Positions 44,666 to 57,820 of a DNA stretch of 64,000 bases are shown piece after piece. Made by a program: the position numbers and the translations under genes. The notes below the pieces were generated by a model. That model saw only the letters and a program-made list of their open reading frames with translations, searched no databases and was not told the DNA's origin. The DNA is from Octopus sinensis (lineage: Eukaryota), in contig NC_043011.1 of NCBI RefSeq assembly GCF_006345805.1, positions 26,238,464 through 26,302,463 of the forward strand, written 5' to 3'. How positions within the stretch are numbered: the first letter of the stretch is position 1; each line of letters begins with the position of its first letter.

Positions 44666-44913
44666 TCAAAGAATGTTCAGTGGAAGGTAAATGTGTGAAT
44701 ATGACGTCAGTAAAACACTTGTGAAGATGGTGGACATTACAGTGAAAGATGATCGTCTGCTCAACCACTTTACAGTGGCGCCACCTGAATGATCGGCTGC
44801 AGATTGCTTCACTTTGTCGATCCATTCTAAGATGACTTCTTCCAATAAAGCCAGCGATATTCGACCGTTTTTTAAAATTTGATGGTGGAAGTCTTTGATA
44901 TTAAATAAATTAC
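44666..44913 (-). CDS. DUF885-family protein, last exon with hydrophobic C-terminal tail
   Basis: poly-T aacacag acceptor; GNLFNIKDFHHQILKNGRISLALLEEVILEWIDK (family F.I.DFH..IL..G...L..LE..I..WI) then SAADHSGGAT..FTVMSTIFTSVLLTSYSHIYLPLNIL*; TGA at 44668-44666. Confidence 0.93.
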
Positions 44914-45033
44914 CTGTGTTAAAAAAAAAAGAAAATAAATAAAACAAATGAATTTTGTATCATACATACATACATACATACATACATCGAAATCTTCACC
45001 AAGGACCAAGTCCGTAGGGTAAACAGTGGCTAT

Positions 45034-45248
45034 AAGAGGAATCCAAGTGAGCAGATATGGAGATAATGATGCAAATAAACAAATGGAACCGCTAGTGCTA
45101 GATATACAATATATACATATATACATTTACATGTATATATCTATATACATTTCATATATCATGTATATCTGTCTGTATATCGAGCCCAGGCGGTTTTATT
45201 TGTTTATTTGCACCATTATCTCCATATCTCCTCATCCGGATTCCTCTT
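45034..45248. mobile_element. Fold-back/MITE-like element with ~75-bp imperfect inverted arms
   Basis: AAGAGGAATCC..AGATATGGAGATAATG.TGCAAATAAACAAAT mirrored on both sides. Confidence 0.7.
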
Positions 45249-45392
45249 CTTGTGTGTGTGTTTGTGTGAGCGCACAAATAAAGTAGAAAACTGGATTCAG
45301 AGGAATCAAGCAGAATCTACTATCAGTTCACATAGAAATTAAATTACGAATACAAATACGCAATCAGTAAATATTTCCACGAGGTGTGAATA

Positions 45393-45787
45393 TCTTTATA
45401 TATAAAAGAGAGGTTGTGTGTCTGTCTCCTACGATTTAGATTCCTAACTACTCCCACATTTTGCGGTGCAGTTTAACCAAAACCGGGTATCTTATAGTCG
45501 TGATTCATATCGAGCCCTTCTGGGTATTAGCGCGAGTCTACGATGAGTCTACGATTAAAAAAAAAATTACCATAATTTTTTCCCATTTTAATGCATTTTT
45601 CGCTATTATATAAGGGAAGTAACTCTCTAAAAATGTCTACGATGAGTCAACGATTAAAAAAAAAATTACCATAATTTTTTTTCCATTTTTAATGCATTTG
45701 TTTCCTAATTTTTGGCTACAACTCTCTAAAAATGCTTATATAGTTATTTCCCTTACAAACCCGAGCAACGCCGGGCGATACTGCTAG
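45393..45787 (+). mobile_element. Non-autonomous Helitron-like element, family HB
   Basis: A|TCTTTATATATAAAAG start; CCCGAGCAACGCCGGGCGATACTGCTAG|T end; ~100-bp internal sub-repeat. Confidence 0.85.
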
Positions 45788-46127
45788 TAATTAATAAGTA
45801 TGAGATGTCAATACAGACTTATTTATGAGTTGAATCTTGCATGAAACCAAAATGTTCCGATATACATGATCAGATAAGTTAATTTTCTCAATATATATAA
45901 ATACAAAATCGTATTATATAACGTTAAGCATTTATATTGATGTAGAATGTACGTATATAGTTTTGAGTGTTAAAATTAATAAAACTGCTGCTGCAGGTAT
46001 ATTTTGCTGGGAAGTGGATTCTTCCACTTCCCAGCAAAAGGAACGGTTGTGGATTTGAAATCTTTCCAGTACAATTACCAAACAGCCATTTTTTCACAAC
46101 CAGTAACAACTGTGTTGCATCACTCAC

Positions 46128-46297
46128 CTAAAGTTTTCTCAGCTATACTTCTTAATTCTTTAATTTTCAATTCTCCAATTTTATATGTACACGCCTGGCC
46201 CGGCCAAGTAATATATCGATCTACTTCTATCTCAACCTGCTGGATTGGAAATTCTGTGTAGTTCGTTATAAAATTGATTGCCTCTTCTCGTGTCCAT
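46128..46297 (-). CDS. DUF885-family protein, penultimate exon
   Basis: ctttcag acceptor, gtgagt donor; [56 protein letters not shown](G), containing the EVDRY...PGQA..YK.G signature; phase 2-1. Confidence 0.95.
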
Positions 46298-46339
46298 CTG
46301 AAAGATCATAAAAAGCAGATGCTTGAATTCAAGATTGGT

Positions 46340-46670
46340 ACATACATACATACATACATACATACATACATACATACATACACATACATACATATACACA
46401 CACACACGTACACACATACGTACGTACATACATACATACACATACACACATACATACATACATACATACACATACACACGTACACCCATACATACATACA
46501 TACATACATACATACATACATACATACATACATACATACACATGAGCATGTCTAGATCGGTAACTATATGCATGAGAATACATACATAAAACATACATAC
46601 ATACATACATACATACATACATACATACATACATACATACATACATACATACATACATACATACATACAA
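46340..46670. repeat. (TACA)n/(CA)n compound microsatellite
   Basis: Direct reading. Confidence 0.95.
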
Positions 46671-47055
46671 AAATCCCCTATTGTTGATGTTGAAATTTCA
46701 ATGAAGGAAACTTGGATCTAGGTTAGAAACCGGTCCTTTCTCTATTGGCAAGAAACCTTGAAATAAAACTGAATCATGACATACATACATACAAATACAG
46801 GGCTGGACAAAATAATGGTTTCAAATTTTGGCACAACACCAGCAAGTTCGGAGGAGGAGATAACTCTATTACATTGACACCCGTTGTCTATCTGGTACTT
46901 ATTTTATCGACCCCGAAAGGCTGAAAAGACAAAGTCGATACATTTGTGTTGATCAGGGTATCCAACGTTTATGATTACGGCAACTCCTTTACTATTTTAT
47001 TGTTTTATTCATCGCTGTGTATCGCAGAATTTTTTATAACGAGTTCTTGGGTTAT

Positions 47056-54659: not shown

Positions 54660-54666
54660 GTGTGTG

Positions 54667-54741
<75 letters not shown>

Positions 54742-55366
54742 GTAGGTAGGTAGGTAGGTAGGTACATCAATTCAAAAGAGTATAAACCTTATAGTTTGCT
54801 TTAGAAAGCCTGTCTACCGGTGTTGGCCTACAGATACGGTTTTATGGCAAAAATCGATCGTATTACTGAAAATACTTCCGGAAATCCGTGAAAATCTATA
54901 GAGTATGTATAAAAAAAGTAATTTAAAAAAGGTTGAGAAAACACTTTTTATAGCATAATAAAGTGGAGATGAAACAATTGTAGCATTATGCAATAAAGCA
55001 GACTCAATCTGTCCTTTTTTCTGGGGTCAATCCATTCGGCTAAGAATTCTTCAAGGCGTTGCCTCAGAATGACTGCAGTCTAATGACTGAAACAGGTAAA
55101 AGAACCTTTCTGAAACATACTGACGTTCACATAAGCCTCTTTACATAAACAATACCAGACACAGCTAACTCTAATACGAACGAATTCATTATGCTAAAAG
55201 CATGGGAGCAAAGGTTAAGCATAAATCAAATGACAAAATAGAGCCGTTAACTGAAAGTAGTTCTTATATTACTTTAAAGACCATAAAGATAATCTCTGAG
55301 TAAATCTTAAGTGTATATTGATAGATCCAACGAAGGGTAGGTTAAATAAAACTAGTACGAACATTT

Positions 55367-55773
55367 GGATCTTTTCGGTTTGAACGGCAGTTTTTAACAT
55401 AATTTCTAGGTAACTAAAAATTTTAAACTTCGTATACTGGTAGAATGTGTTTATAAAACATCTTTTTCTCTTGGCTTTATTGAGAAAATTCTATAGTTTG
55501 TAAGATATTTGTTGTTGTTTTTCTTCAGTTTCTGCAATTTCAACCAATCAGTGACGTCTATTGAGTTAAAACGCATTCTGTGCCGTATGAATATGTCCCT
55601 CGTTTAAGAAACAGATTGGGTTTATTTAAATTTGTGAAGAAAAAAAGATACCCTTCCCCCACCCCTAACCCTAAAACATTGAAATGCAATAGATCGATAC
55701 TAGGGTCATAATTATGGGTGACAATTTCATATGACACCGCTAGAAAAAACTGCCGTTCAAACCGAAAAGATCC
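55367..55773. mobile_element. MITE with perfect 29-bp TIRs, superfamily unclear
   Basis: GGATCTTTTCGGTTTGAACGGCAGTTTTT at 55367-55395 and reverse complement at 55745-55773; no clear TSD. Confidence 0.88.
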
Positions 55774-56917
55774 CTGCTCTATGATACTGATATCAAAATC
55801 ATGCATACATTTTATTTTTCGAAGATGCATATTAAGGACAATTTTTTGCTTTTTAAATCAGGAAATTCAGTGTTTCAACTCAATCTTTTGTTCCTTCTGA
55901 AATATGTCGATTGATACAGCTACAGATTATCTTCAGTTGGCTTTGGATTATAGAAAGACTACAGCATTTTTAGTTACAGTCATATGAGCGATTATCAACA
56001 TTTTCAGAGTTAAACCTAAAAACTGTAGCGAAACTAATTTAAGTATAGTGATTATTTTCGACATTACTTAAGATGTACATACTAGCAAATATTCTCCTAA
56101 CATAAATGAACATTCAAATCAACCACCTCCAATGGTTAAAAAATTAAGAAGTTGATATAAGTAGGCCCATTTCTAACATAGTGTTAGGTGTAAATAAATT
56201 TAACTGTGTCGCCGTTTATTACAACGGTGCCTTATAAGTTCCCTTTAAACGAAAGAAAATAGATAAAATTAGACAAAGAGAAACAAAGAACTGTCAAGGG
56301 AAGATGAAAAATAGACAAAGGAAATCCTCATTAATCTTAATATCCGTACTAATACTGGCTAGAATCTAAACCATATTCATTTTAAGAAAAATTCATTTAA
56401 GATATGTATGCATCCAGACTCAAAGAAAAAGGCGCACTACTTCGTCAATGTATATATGGAAGCTAAAAGACAACATTTTAAAAAATGGTCAATGGTCGAT
56501 CACGCTGCTACATCTAAGATCAGTTTGAAAAATGAGAAATGTGCTACAAAGAGAACTATACTATTTTAAGAGACTCAATTCTTGCTAAATAAGAAAATAA
56601 GAAACTGCCGTTTTATCAATAAATACACACTGAAATACTTGGAATCAAAACATACATGTACATGTATATACATACATAATCCTATATGTGGCCGTTCAAT
56701 TCACTATAAGTAGTAGTTAAATCTCCCTCAAACCACAAGCTGCTGTCTGAAAAGATGGGATAGTTCATTAGCTATTTTAAACCAAGGTACTCAAAACCGC
56801 CCAATGGTAGCAGCTAGACCACTCTTGATGATGGTTCTACTCGGCTAGTGCTGATCTGGAATAAAAGATAGCAGCAGAAGCAACAACAAAATTGAAACAA
56901 GTTATGAAACTACTTAC

Positions 56918-56982
56918 AATTCATAGGGATCTTTATAGAGATTCAATTCTTCACCGAGAAATTCAGCGTAAGTTGCCCAACC
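56918..56982 (-). CDS. DUF885-family protein exon
   Basis: tttaaag acceptor, gtaagt donor; GWATYAEFLGEELNLYKDPYE(L); 65 nt, phase 0-2. Confidence 0.92.
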
Positions 56983-57067
56983 CTTTAAAGAATAAATGAA
57001 AATTGTTAGAATTCACATAATTCACACACACACACGCACACACACACCACACACGCACACACACACA

Positions 57068-57100
<33 letters not shown>

Positions 57101-57712
57101 TAGATAGATAGATAGACTACGAGGCAAGAAGGAGACAAGCAAACAAATAATACATAAAGTAGGACAATCAAAATGCTTGACGGAAAATGTGTAGAAATAT
57201 GAAACGAAAAGAAAAAACGCTGTAAGAATGTATACAATGAATATAAAACACATACACATTTCTATCAACTTTTCCTTCTAGGAACTAAAAACAGCAACCA
57301 CACATGAATAACAAGTCTAGGGGAAGTATCCACATGAATACCCTGCAAGAAGTAACAGCCAAATCTTCCTGATATTACTCGTTACTTTCTTATTTAAAAA
57401 CTGCACATTAGATAACATAGTTCAAGAGACACTACACCTGATTTAAAAAGTACTTTTCATTATAGCTCCGGTATTTTCAGGGCTGGCTGGCTGGCTGGTT
57501 GGCAATATCAAGTAAATCTCTCTAAAATTGCCCCCTGGTGTAAAAATGGAATAGTTTCGGTAGGACAGTCTTCATCGACTTGTTCGGGGTTATTTTGGGA
57601 GTCTAAACAGCAACAACAACAAACACAACAATAACAATAAAAACAACAATTACAGACAACGAGAAGGAAGGGAAAAAATGTGAGTCATCAACGAAGAAAG
57701 CAGGGAACCTAC

Positions 57713-57820
57713 CTCCATAAATGCCGCGTAATTTGGGAGAGCTAAAGGTACAGCATAATATTTGCCAGAGAGGTAGAGACGGCGGTATTTCGGTATTGGG
57801 TTGGCGTTGCTGTAAGAGAC
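57713..57820 (-). CDS. DUF885-family protein, internal exon (first visible)
   Basis: Minus strand tcttctgcag acceptor and gtaggt donor; 108 nt, phase 0-0; VSYSNANPIPKYRRLYLSGKYYAVPLALPNYAAFME splices in frame to GW.. giving the family EGW motif. Confidence 0.88.

What the first reader, a model, noticed from the sequence alone, without database searches (positions are those of the whole stretch)
44666..57820. Intron-containing animal gene for a DUF885 (bacterial-type, putative zinc metallopeptidase) protein hidden from the ORF track
Seen: four minus-strand exons with canonical splice sites and compatible phases join into 196 aa carrying Y..F.EGW..YAE.LG, EVDRY..WPGQA..YK.GE.KI.ELR and F.I.DFH..IL..G motifs. 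Established: these are DUF885 (Pfam PF05960) features; the family is annotated as bacterial, is functionally uncharacterised and has an upstream HExxPGHH motif suggestive of a gluzincin. Inference: this is a bona fide host gene (introns up to 10.6 kb), either an old horizontal acquisition or a patchily retained ancient gene encoding an undescribed cell-surface peptidase. The EGW motif with the putative third Zn ligand is split exactly at an intron.
Basis: partly seen in the sequence, partly recalled or inferred. Interest (0 to 1): 0.8.

Follow-up and report, generated by a model that had tools for sequence, protein, structure and literature searches.

The report
Invertebrate DUF885 gene, one exon missing

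Summary
The four minus-strand exons are real: A 57820-57713, B 56982-56918, C 46297-46128 and D 44913-44666. All have AG/GT borders. The 196-aa product scores 132 bits (E 6.6e-38) on Pfam PF05960.

The B-to-C join is wrong or incomplete. Every homologue has 24 more residues there (xGRYxxExxRAxRLVVDTGxHxxG), carrying 8 of the family's 41 invariant columns. In the closest relative, and in Lingula, Limulus and Potamilus, a separate 72-nt exon encodes them. Protein and DNA models find no such exon anywhere in the readable window. The only unread stretch between B and C is the gap at 49476-49575.

Exon sizes and intron phases (105-111 / 65 / 72 / 170 nt) match across mollusc, brachiopod and chelicerate. 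Replacement changes are few (pN 0.15) while silent sites are saturated (pS 0.91). This is therefore an old, constrained host gene, not a recent transfer.

The HExxPGHH exon and the N-terminal ~60% of the protein are not in the window. DUF885 genes are already annotated in cnidarians, molluscs, annelids, brachiopods and arthropods, and one was found abundant in a spider venom proteome.

Peptidase activity and surface anchoring remain inferences. The evidence is the M32/M3/ACE structural neighbours and a GPI-signal-like tail shared by molluscs and Lingula.

The parts
57713..57820 (-). Exon A (108 nt, phase 0 to 0): VSYSNANPIPKYRRLYLSGKYYAVPLALPNYAAFME. It ends on the Glu of the invariant EGW motif and contains the roughly 12-aa eukaryote-type insertion.
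   Evidence: AG/GT borders. Family HMM positions 306-345, E 1.7e-4. Same exon in Lingula (108 nt), Limulus (111) and Potamilus (105). PGHH-to-EGW spacing of eukaryote type.
56983..57712 (-). Intron A-B (730 nt, phase 0). It splits E|GW.
   Evidence: gtaggt...tttaaag. Same position and phase in Lingula, Limulus and Potamilus.
56918..56982 (-). Exon B (65 nt, ends in phase 2): GWATYAEFLGEELNLYKDPYE + TT.
   Evidence: HMM positions 344-366, E 3.8e-7. Exactly 65 nt in L001, Lingula, Limulus and Potamilus. DNA model from the other species hits at E 9.9e-15.
46298..56917 (-). Interval between exons B and C (10,620 nt). It was read as one intron. It should contain a 72-nt exon B' (xGRYxxExxRAxRLVVDxGxHxxG, phase 2 to 2), which is not in the readable sequence.
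   Evidence: B' is present as a 72-nt exon in L001, Lingula, Limulus and Potamilus. It is absent from the window by tblastn, protein HMM, family HMM and nhmmer.
49476..49575 (.). Assembly gap (100 N, true length unknown). It is the only unread stretch between exons B and C and the likely site of the missing exon B'.
   Evidence: N run located. Flanks shown. Flanks do not overlap or resemble each other. A mariner-like transposase fragment abuts its low-coordinate side.
46128..46297 (-). Exon C (170 nt): (x)[56 protein letters not shown](G). Its first base, A, would complete a GGA Gly codon after exon B'.
   Evidence: HMM positions 388-449, E 1.7e-29. 170 nt in L001, Lingula and Potamilus; 103+67 nt in Limulus. 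76% aa identity to L001.
44914..46127 (-). Intron C-D (1,214 nt, phase 1).
   Evidence: gtgagt...aacacag. Same position and phase in Lingula, Limulus and Potamilus.
44666..44913 (-). Exon D (last coding exon, 248 nt with TGA): end of the DUF885 domain (NLFNIKDFHHQILKNGRISLALLEEVILEWIDKVKQ) plus a 45-aa C-terminal extension.
   Evidence: HMM positions 447-484, E 6.4e-9.
44669..44803 (-). C-terminal extension SAADHSGGATVKWLSRRSSFTVMSTIFTSVLLTSYSHIYLPLNIL. Small residues, a short polar spacer, then a moderately hydrophobic tail running to the C-terminus: a GPI-attachment-signal-like pattern.
   Evidence: Max Kyte-Doolittle 15-residue mean is 1.52. Equivalent tails occur in L001, Nucella, Crassostrea, Ylistrum, Liolophura, Gigantopelta and Lingula (1.95-2.67). 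They are absent in Capitella, Limulus, cnidarians and bacteria.
44597..44602 (-). AATAAA hexamer 64 nt after the stop codon, a candidate polyadenylation signal.
   Evidence: Sequence only; not tested.

Best explanation
The region holds the last four readable coding exons of an ancient, vertically inherited metazoan DUF885 gene in a mollusc-like genome.

The gene as assembled is incomplete in two ways. First, a fifth exon of 72 nt is missing between exons B and C and most likely sits in the assembly gap at 49476-49575. It encodes the invariant helix xGRYxxExxRAxRLVVDTGxHxxG. Second, the exons for about the first 60% of the protein, including HExxPGHH, lie beyond base 64000.

Inferred mechanism. 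The full protein (~560-600 aa in relatives) is an all-helical, two-lobed enzyme of the DUF885 fold. Its nearest neighbours outside the family are the M32 carboxypeptidase / M3 neurolysin / ACE group. A zinc would be held by His/Glu of HExxPGHH and by the Glu of EGW (last codon of exon A). The exon-B' helix (invariant Arg, Asp, His) and the [12 protein letters not shown].GE segment (exon C) would line the substrate channel. On that model it would cut short peptides rather than folded proteins.

In molluscs and brachiopods, this gene included, a C-terminal signal-like hydrophobic tail suggests attachment to the outer cell surface by a GPI anchor.

What is shown: gene identity, exon structure, the missing exon, conservation, and the fold of a homologue. 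What is inferred: metal ligands, peptidase activity, substrate size limit, and membrane anchoring.
For: Identity:
- Pfam PF05960 at 132 bits.
- Per-exon family HMM hits.
- The alignment shows all family motifs of the C-terminal third.

Host gene and age:
- Canonical splice sites.
- Exon lengths and phases are identical to Lingula, Limulus and Potamilus. Each has HExxPGHHxQ| in phase 0, then 105-111, 65, 72 and 170 nt.
- The window groups with relative L001 (100% bootstrap) and then the gastropod Nucella (85.5%).
- The eukaryote-type spacing between PGHH and EGW is 36-38 in named eukaryotes against 25-26 in named bacteria. The window's exon A fits 37.

Constraint: pN 0.15 against pS 0.91 versus L001 over 114 codons.

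Missing exon:
- Present in all four comparators.
- Holds 8 of 41 invariant columns.
- Undetectable in the readable window while controls succeed.
- The gap lies in the right interval and its flanks do not overlap.

Fold:
- AlphaFold2 model of Lingula P0142 has pLDDT 92.8.
- Foldseek gives 3o0y at TM 0.84, then 3iuk and 3u24. The next hits are M32 carboxypeptidase 5e3x (E 5.8e-3, prob 1.0), neurolysin, oligoendopeptidase F and ACE.
- PMC12572635 notes that Pfam places DUF885 in the Peptidase_MA clan.
- FFAS linked a spider DUF885 protein to M32 carboxypeptidases (PMC7682650).

Tail: shared C-terminal hydrophobic extension in molluscs and Lingula.
Against: - The missing exon has not been seen in this genome. 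It could have been lost.
- About 60% of the coding sequence, including the proposed catalytic motif and any signal peptide, lies outside the window, so intactness is unknown.
- No protein from this gene or from a close (>80% identical) species was found in the 5.8-billion-protein collection. No transcript evidence is available.
- HExxPGHH is not a canonical HExxH. In the model the HE ends one helix and the HH starts the next.
- Structural matches to M32/M3/ACE have low TM-scores (0.2-0.38).
- No DUF885 protein has a demonstrated activity in the literature searched.
- The window's tail is only moderately hydrophobic (1.52).
- Most mollusc gene models lack a recognisable N-terminal signal peptide. 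These models look truncated.
Confidence: 0.72

Rival explanations
1. Decaying or truncated gene copy. Exon B' has really been deleted in this lineage, and the locus is a pseudogene or yields a crippled protein lacking the RLVVDTGxH helix.
For: No trace of the 72-nt exon in 10.5 kb of readable B-C sequence at protein or DNA level. Upstream exons are not visible. No matching protein from this species in the protein collection. The introns are loaded with transposon fragments and microsatellites.
Against: All four readable exons are open with intact AG/GT borders. They keep every invariant residue of their segments. Replacement changes are few while silent sites are saturated. An assembly gap sits exactly in the interval where the exon is expected.
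Confidence: 0.15
2. B is spliced directly to C, giving a natural in-frame isoform of 196 C-terminal residues.
For: B ends in phase 2 and C starts with one base, so the direct join is in frame (TT+A = Leu).
Against: The frame compatibility is automatic, because the skipped exon is 72 nt in all relatives. The skipped segment holds 8 of 41 family-invariant columns and forms a long core helix, residues 410-434 in the Lingula model. No homologue among those aligned lacks it.
Confidence: 0.05
3. Bacterial contamination or a recent bacterium-to-animal transfer.
For: Pfam titles the family 'Bacterial protein of unknown function'. Identity to bacterial homologues (about 44%) is as high as to other animal phyla. 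DUF885 is on the list of candidate bacterial transfers in Dictyostelium (PMC3188802).
Against: The gene has four spliceosomal introns at positions and phases shared with a brachiopod, a bivalve and a horseshoe crab. It has the eukaryote-specific insertion. It sits within host-type repeats and 34-40% GC sequence. It groups with molluscs in the tree. A transfer into an early eukaryote or early animal is not excluded: the bacteria|eukaryote split has only 64% bootstrap and bacterial sampling was narrow.
Confidence: 0.02
4. A real and intact gene, but the protein is not a peptidase. For example it could be a metal-dependent hydrolase of another substrate, or a binding protein.
For: No activity has been reported for any DUF885 protein. 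The HExxPGHH motif departs from HExxH. Structural similarity to M32/M3/ACE is weak (TM 0.2-0.38).
Against: The invariant H, E, H, H and the Glu of EGW are kept across bacteria and animals. The only non-family structural neighbours above noise are zinc oligopeptidases and carboxypeptidases. Pfam places the family in the Peptidase_MA clan (PMC12572635).
Confidence: 0.25

Closest known systems
Annotated animal 'DUF885 domain-containing' / uncharacterized LOC proteins, e.g. Lingula anatina LOC106165408 (P0142), Nucella lapillus (P0196), Crassostrea gigas LOC105326091 (P0028), Potamilus streckersoni (P0144), Limulus polyphemus LOC106461179 (P0151), Nematostella LOC5516230 (P0148)
   Same: Same family and same motifs. 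Same exon sizes and intron phases where checked (Lingula, Limulus, Potamilus). Same eukaryote-type insertion. Molluscs and Lingula share the hydrophobic C-terminal tail..
   Different: Only 38-54% identical to the named ones. The closest sequence is an unnamed contig (L001) at 76-88% identity in exons B and C. In this window the 72-nt exon and everything upstream of exon A are not visible.
Bacterial DUF885 proteins with solved structures: 3O0Y (Colwellia psychrerythraea putative lipoprotein), 3IUK (Arthrobacter aurescens), 3U24 (Shewanella oneidensis)
   Same: Same Pfam family. The model of the animal homologue superposes on 3o0y at TM 0.84. Profile E-value is 3e-131. Same invariant residues.
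   Different: No introns. The PGHH-EGW spacing is 25-26 in the named bacterial homologues and 36-38 in eukaryotes. No C-terminal hydrophobic tail; the bacterial ones are titled lipoproteins, which are anchored at the N-terminus. Function is equally unknown.
M32 carboxypeptidases (e.g. FisCP 5E3X) and the related M3 (neurolysin, oligoendopeptidase F) and M2 (ACE) zinc peptidases
   Same: They are the only non-family structural neighbours above noise. All are all-helical, with a His/Glu motif and a downstream Glu. FFAS made the same link for a spider DUF885 protein (PMC7682650).
   Different: No sequence-level match. The motif is HExxPGHH rather than HExxH and is split over two helices in the model. 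TM-scores are only 0.2-0.38. No activity has been shown. This is a resemblance, not membership.
DUF885 protein of Physocyclus mexicanus (pholcid spider) venom proteome, 599 aa (PMC7682650)
   Same: An animal DUF885 protein shown to be made and secreted (239 peptide spectra). It supports an extracellular location for animal members.
   Different: It is from an arthropod. The arthropod sequences compared here lack the hydrophobic C-terminal tail.

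Membership tests
DUF885 (Pfam PF05960) | Score above the Pfam gathering threshold | tested here: met
   132 bits against a cut-off of 32.4, E 6.6e-38, for the 196-aa spliced peptide.
DUF885 (Pfam PF05960) | Invariant EGW..Y.E motif | tested here: met
   E is the last codon of exon A. GWATYAEFLGEE is at the start of exon B.
DUF885 (Pfam PF05960) | Invariant helix G..R..RLV.D.G.H (Lingula G415-H434) | tested here: inconclusive
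   Absent from all readable sequence. An assembly gap lies in the interval where its 72-nt exon is expected, so absence from the genome is not shown.
DUF885 (Pfam PF05960) | Invariant E..RY..(W)PGQ...YK.G...R motif and C-terminal F..FH helix | tested here: met
   [26 protein letters not shown] in exon C and FNIKDFHHQIL in exon D.
DUF885 (Pfam PF05960) | HExxPGHH motif | not testable with these tools
   No match in 57821-64000. The exon must lie beyond the window. It is invariant in 40 full-length homologues.
Ancient metazoan (vertically inherited) DUF885 clade | Shared intron positions and phases with other animal phyla | tested here: met
   Window exon sizes A 108, B 65 and C 170 nt, and their phases, equal those of Lingula, Potamilus and Limulus. 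In Limulus, C is split 103+67.
Ancient metazoan (vertically inherited) DUF885 clade | Eukaryote-type ~12-aa insertion between PGHH and EGW | tested here: met
   Spacing is 36-38 in 25 named eukaryote proteins and 25-26 in 9 named bacterial ones. The window's exon A implies 37.
Ancient metazoan (vertically inherited) DUF885 clade | Eukaryote sequences form one group apart from bacteria in a tree | tested here: inconclusive
   Neighbour-joining on 175 columns gives the bacteria|eukaryote split 64% bootstrap. Only the bacterial sequences closest to the animal query were sampled.
Zinc metallopeptidases of the Peptidase_MA clan (gluzincins; M32/M3/M2-like) | Canonical HExxH on one helix | tested here: not met
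   Homologues have HExxPGHH. In the AlphaFold2 model H346-E347 end helix 337-347 and H352-H353 start helix 352-361. The window itself lacks this exon.
Zinc metallopeptidases of the Peptidase_MA clan (gluzincins; M32/M3/M2-like) | Fold similarity to solved members | tested here: inconclusive
   Foldseek: 5e3x (M32) E 5.8e-3, prob 1.0, but TM 0.34-0.38. Neurolysin, PepF and ACE at E 0.03-0.3. Tested on the Lingula homologue, not the window protein.
Zinc metallopeptidases of the Peptidase_MA clan (gluzincins; M32/M3/M2-like) | Zinc-dependent peptide hydrolysis | not testable with these tools
   No experimental report was found for any DUF885 protein.
GPI-anchored surface proteins | C-terminal signal: small residues, polar spacer, hydrophobic tail reaching the C-terminus | tested here: inconclusive
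   The pattern is present (..HSGGAT VKWLSRRSS FTVMSTIFTSVLLTSYSHIYLPLNIL) but only moderately hydrophobic (1.52). It is clearer in oyster, chiton, scallop and Lingula (2.0-2.7). No dedicated predictor was available.
GPI-anchored surface proteins | N-terminal secretory signal peptide | not testable with these tools
   The N-terminal exons are outside the window. Relatives' gene models look N-terminally truncated.

The most novel reading that the evidence does not exclude
Molluscs and brachiopods carry a GPI-anchored ecto-form of a DUF885 zinc oligopeptidase. On this reading it is a metazoan surface peptidase family unrelated in sequence to neprilysin or ACE. It appears among the named hits in cnidarians and several protostome phyla but not in vertebrates, insects or nematodes, and it might process extracellular (neuro)peptides. 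The intron-exon structure dates it to before the protostome split. The family's biochemistry is entirely unexplored.
Probability: 0.2. Interest if true: 0.55.

Novelty: new member of a known kind. Interest (0 to 1): 0.25.

Why it matters
For this genome, the result flags an apparently unannotated gene and an assembly gap that probably hides a coding exon. Any automatic gene model here would either skip the exon, giving an in-frame but crippled protein, or fail.

More broadly, DUF885 is a large family: more than 7,600 proteins scored E<=1e-20 in a single search, and only 8,000 candidates were scored. It is highly conserved, has three solved structures and has no known function. Animal members are old, constrained and, in at least one spider, abundantly secreted.

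The conserved exon structure documented here shows that the Pfam label 'bacterial' is misleading. It also gives a firm basis for treating the animal genes as vertically inherited. None of this is a new kind of system.

Tried and rejected
1. Search for the missing exon in the window. I used tblastn with nine homologues, a brute-force BLOSUM scan (timed out), a protein HMM of the 24-aa segment with filters off, blastn of the relative's exon with flanks and nhmmer with a four-species DNA model. All were negative, and the positive controls worked.

2. Intron-level DNA similarity between the window and L001, to place the exon relative to the gap. Only exon B aligns. The species are too diverged; silent sites are saturated.

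3. Upstream exons in 57821-64000. None was found.

4. Naming the host organism. A protein search with a mariner-like ORF returned nothing. No tRNA or Rfam hits were found. The taxon is inferred only from the tree as mollusc-like.

5. Genomic loci for Nucella, Nematostella and Acropora proteins. None was on record, so intron conservation with a cnidarian could not be tested.

6. Sequence-profile link to known peptidase families in the PDB. Only the three DUF885 entries matched.

7. Literature on function. 17 papers mention DUF885 and none gives an activity.

8. Spurious gap from overlapping contig ends. The flanks share no similarity.

9. Recent horizontal transfer or contamination. Rejected on intron conservation.

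Full report
**What is in the sequence.**
The window is AT-rich (29-46% GC), dense in microsatellites and full of transposon fragments, as expected of an invertebrate genome.

- A 57820-57713: 108 nt.
- B 56982-56918: 65 nt.
- C 46297-46128: 170 nt.
- D 44913-44666: 248 nt including TGA.

Each is bounded by AG and GT(A/G)AGT-type sites behind pyrimidine-rich tracts. Joined, they give 591 nt, or 196 aa. That peptide scores 132 bits (E 6.6e-38) on Pfam PF05960, DUF885.

A family HMM built from 45 homologues without the window hits each exon separately on the minus strand. The E-values run from 1.7e-4 to 1.7e-29, and the exons are colinear with HMM positions 306-345, 344-366, 388-449 and 447-484.

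**The gap and the B-C junction.**
The scan's program asked that the gap at 49476-49575 be tested first. The gap lies inside the 10.6-kb interval between exons B and C, so it breaks no read exon. That interval is nevertheless not a simple intron.

In every homologue, 24 residues (xGRYxxExxRAxRLVVDTGxHxxG) sit between '..DPYE(L)' and 'WTRE..'. The window model lacks them; these are HMM positions 367-387.

The closest relative I could find is an unnamed 59-kb contig, L001. It is 87.5% identical in exon B and 76% in exon C. There these residues are a separate 72-nt exon lying between the counterparts of B and C.

Exact exon maps of the annotated genes show the same 72-nt exon in three more animals: Lingula (brachiopod), Limulus (chelicerate) and Potamilus (bivalve). 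That is why the model looked consistent.

The segment carries 8 of the 41 invariant columns in a 40-sequence full-length alignment: G415, R423, R426, L427, V428, D430, G432 and H434 in Lingula numbering. It forms most of a long helix, residues 410-434, in the structure model.

I could not find it anywhere in the readable window.
- tblastn with nine homologues: nothing.
- Dedicated protein HMM with all filters off: nothing at E<=1000, against 51 bits on L001.
- Four-species DNA model: best hit E 2.4 on the wrong strand. The equivalent control model for exon B finds the window's exon at E 9.9e-15.

The two gap flanks share no sequence, so the gap is not an artefact of overlapping contig ends. 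The simplest reading is that the exon lies in the unread stretch. Loss of the exon is the alternative.

**Is it a host gene, and how old is it?**
The exon structure settles this. Lingula, Limulus and Potamilus all have an exon ending HExxPGHHxQ in phase 0. It is followed by exons of 105-111, 65, 72 and 170 nt, and then the terminal exon(s). In Limulus the 170-nt exon is split 103+67.

The window has 108, 65, [missing] and 170 nt with the same phases. Introns at identical positions and phases in a mollusc-like genome, a bivalve, a brachiopod and a horseshoe crab mean the gene already had this structure before the protostome lineages separated.

Other evidence agrees.
- **Insertion.** Named eukaryote proteins have 36-38 residues between PGHH and EGW, and named bacterial ones have 25-26. 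The window's exon A implies 37.
- **Tree.** In a neighbour-joining tree on 175 columns the window pairs with L001 (98-100% bootstrap) and then with the gastropod Nucella (85.5%). Cnidarian and chelicerate groups are recovered. The sampled bacteria fall on one side of a single split, with only 64% support and narrow bacterial sampling.
- **Constraint.** Against L001, replacement differences are 0.15 per site while silent sites are saturated at 0.91. The coding sequence has been under purifying selection for most of a long divergence.

Recent transfer or contamination is excluded. A transfer into an early eukaryote or early animal remains possible and cannot be decided here. DUF885 is on the list of candidate bacterial acquisitions in Dictyostelium (PMC3188802).

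**What is not in the window.**
HMM positions 1-305, about 60% of the protein, have no match in 57821-64000 or elsewhere in the window. This includes HExxPGHH and any signal peptide. The intron upstream of exon A is therefore longer than 6.2 kb. It contains Tc1-like transposase fragments. Whether the gene is intact cannot be decided from this window.

**How it probably works.**
An AlphaFold2 model of the full-length Lingula homologue is confident, with pLDDT 92.8.

It superposes on the three structural-genomics DUF885 entries: 3o0y at TM 0.84, then 3iuk and 3u24. After these, the only hits above noise are an M32 carboxypeptidase (5e3x, E 5.8e-3), neurolysin, oligoendopeptidase F and ACE, all with low TM-scores of 0.2-0.38. 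A sequence profile finds only the three DUF885 entries.

Pfam places the family in the Peptidase_MA clan, as cited in PMC12572635. FFAS linked a spider DUF885 protein to M32 carboxypeptidases (PMC7682650).

I therefore take the most likely mechanism to be a zinc hydrolase of short peptides. The metal would be held by residues of HExxPGHH and by the Glu of EGW. The exon-B' helix and the [12 protein letters not shown].GE segment would line an enclosed channel.

This is inference, for three reasons.
- The motif is not a canonical HExxH, and in the model it spans two helices.
- I could not measure ligand geometry.
- No activity is reported for any member.

From memory only: the R..RLV.D element resembles the IRxxAD motif of M32 enzymes. 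I did not test this.

**Location.**
The terminal exon adds 45 residues after the domain. They comprise small residues (HSGGA), a polar spacer, and a moderately hydrophobic stretch running to the C-terminus.

Equivalent and more hydrophobic tails are present in L001, Nucella, oyster, scallop, chiton, Gigantopelta and Lingula. They are absent in Capitella, Limulus, cnidarians and bacteria.

It needs a signal peptide that the window cannot show. A tail-anchored cytosolic protein is the alternative. A secreted animal member is documented in spider venom.

**Comparison with what is known, and novelty.**
DUF885 genes are already annotated across invertebrates, as 'DUF885 domain-containing protein' or as uncharacterized LOC entries. 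The named hits include Nematostella, Acropora, Lingula, Capitella, Limulus, Tachypleus, krill and many molluscs. They have been noticed in venom-gland and salivary data sets.

No vertebrate, insect or nematode appears among the named best hits. That fits a patchy distribution but does not prove it.

This locus itself had no close match in the protein collection. The best was 77% identity over one exon, from L001, so the locus appears unannotated. I rate it a new member of a known kind.

**Limits.**
- The host taxon is not named.
- There is no transcript evidence.
- The tree is short and distance-based.
- Cnidarian loci could not be fetched.
- The structure and invariant-residue analyses were done on homologues, because the window holds only the C-terminal third of the protein.

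Noticed in passing
window 58332-59257 (-) and 61607-61936; inverted repeat arms 58969-59120 / 61785-61936: Tc1-like transposase fragments (DDE_3 E 8e-13; HTH_Tnp_Tc3_2 E 7e-10) lie in the intron upstream of exon A. A second partial copy in the opposite orientation gives a 152-nt, 86% complementary inverted repeat.
   Followed up: partly
window 48515-49170 (+), abutting the gap at 49476: A mariner-like transposase fragment (Transposase_1, E 4.6e-6), broken over several frames, lies just beside the assembly gap. Repeats here may be why the assembly broke.
   Followed up: partly
window 12345-12812 (+) and 23999-24376 (+): Two further mariner-like C-terminal transposase ORFs, similar to each other (..QYNA(Q/R)PHT..PYSPGIAPSDYHLF..). 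The protein search with the first one found no relatives at E<=1e-10.
   Followed up: partly
window 30000-34000, ORFs 31264-32010 (-), 32189-32713 (-): A GC-richer block (43-46% GC) with strong G-over-C skew (0.26-0.46). It holds a weak GIY-YIG match (E 0.005) next to an ORF that reads like part of a reverse transcriptase (not confirmed by Pfam), which recalls a Penelope-like retroelement. It also has a proline/serine-rich low-complexity ORF.
   Followed up: no
window 46300-46690, 50230-51590, 57980-58140, 60360-60540, 53300-54000 and others: Very dense microsatellites, (TATG)n / (CATA)n, (CA)n, (TA)n and (AAT)n, lie inside and around the gene's introns. One begins about 30 bases upstream of exon C's acceptor.
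   Followed up: no
L001 (ENA ERZ21867824 ctg96162l) 5760-12420: A contig filed under a metagenome assembly carries the orthologous gene, with the same exons (65, 72, 170 nt and a terminal exon) and AT-rich, microsatellite-bearing introns. It is evidently host (animal) DNA within that sample.
   Followed up: partly
Homologue sets: JGI labels many metagenomic DUF885 proteins 'prolyl oligopeptidase'. That is a serine-peptidase name, and it does not fit this family's fold or motifs. It looks like an annotation transfer error.
   Followed up: no
Sinanodonta woodiana P0155/P0160 (same 114.8-Mb contig); Potamilus P0144, P0166, P0227, P0011: Freshwater mussels carry several DUF885 paralogues. The two Sinanodonta proteins have adjacent locus tags on one contig. 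The family has expanded in bivalves, whereas the window shows a single set of exons.
   Followed up: no
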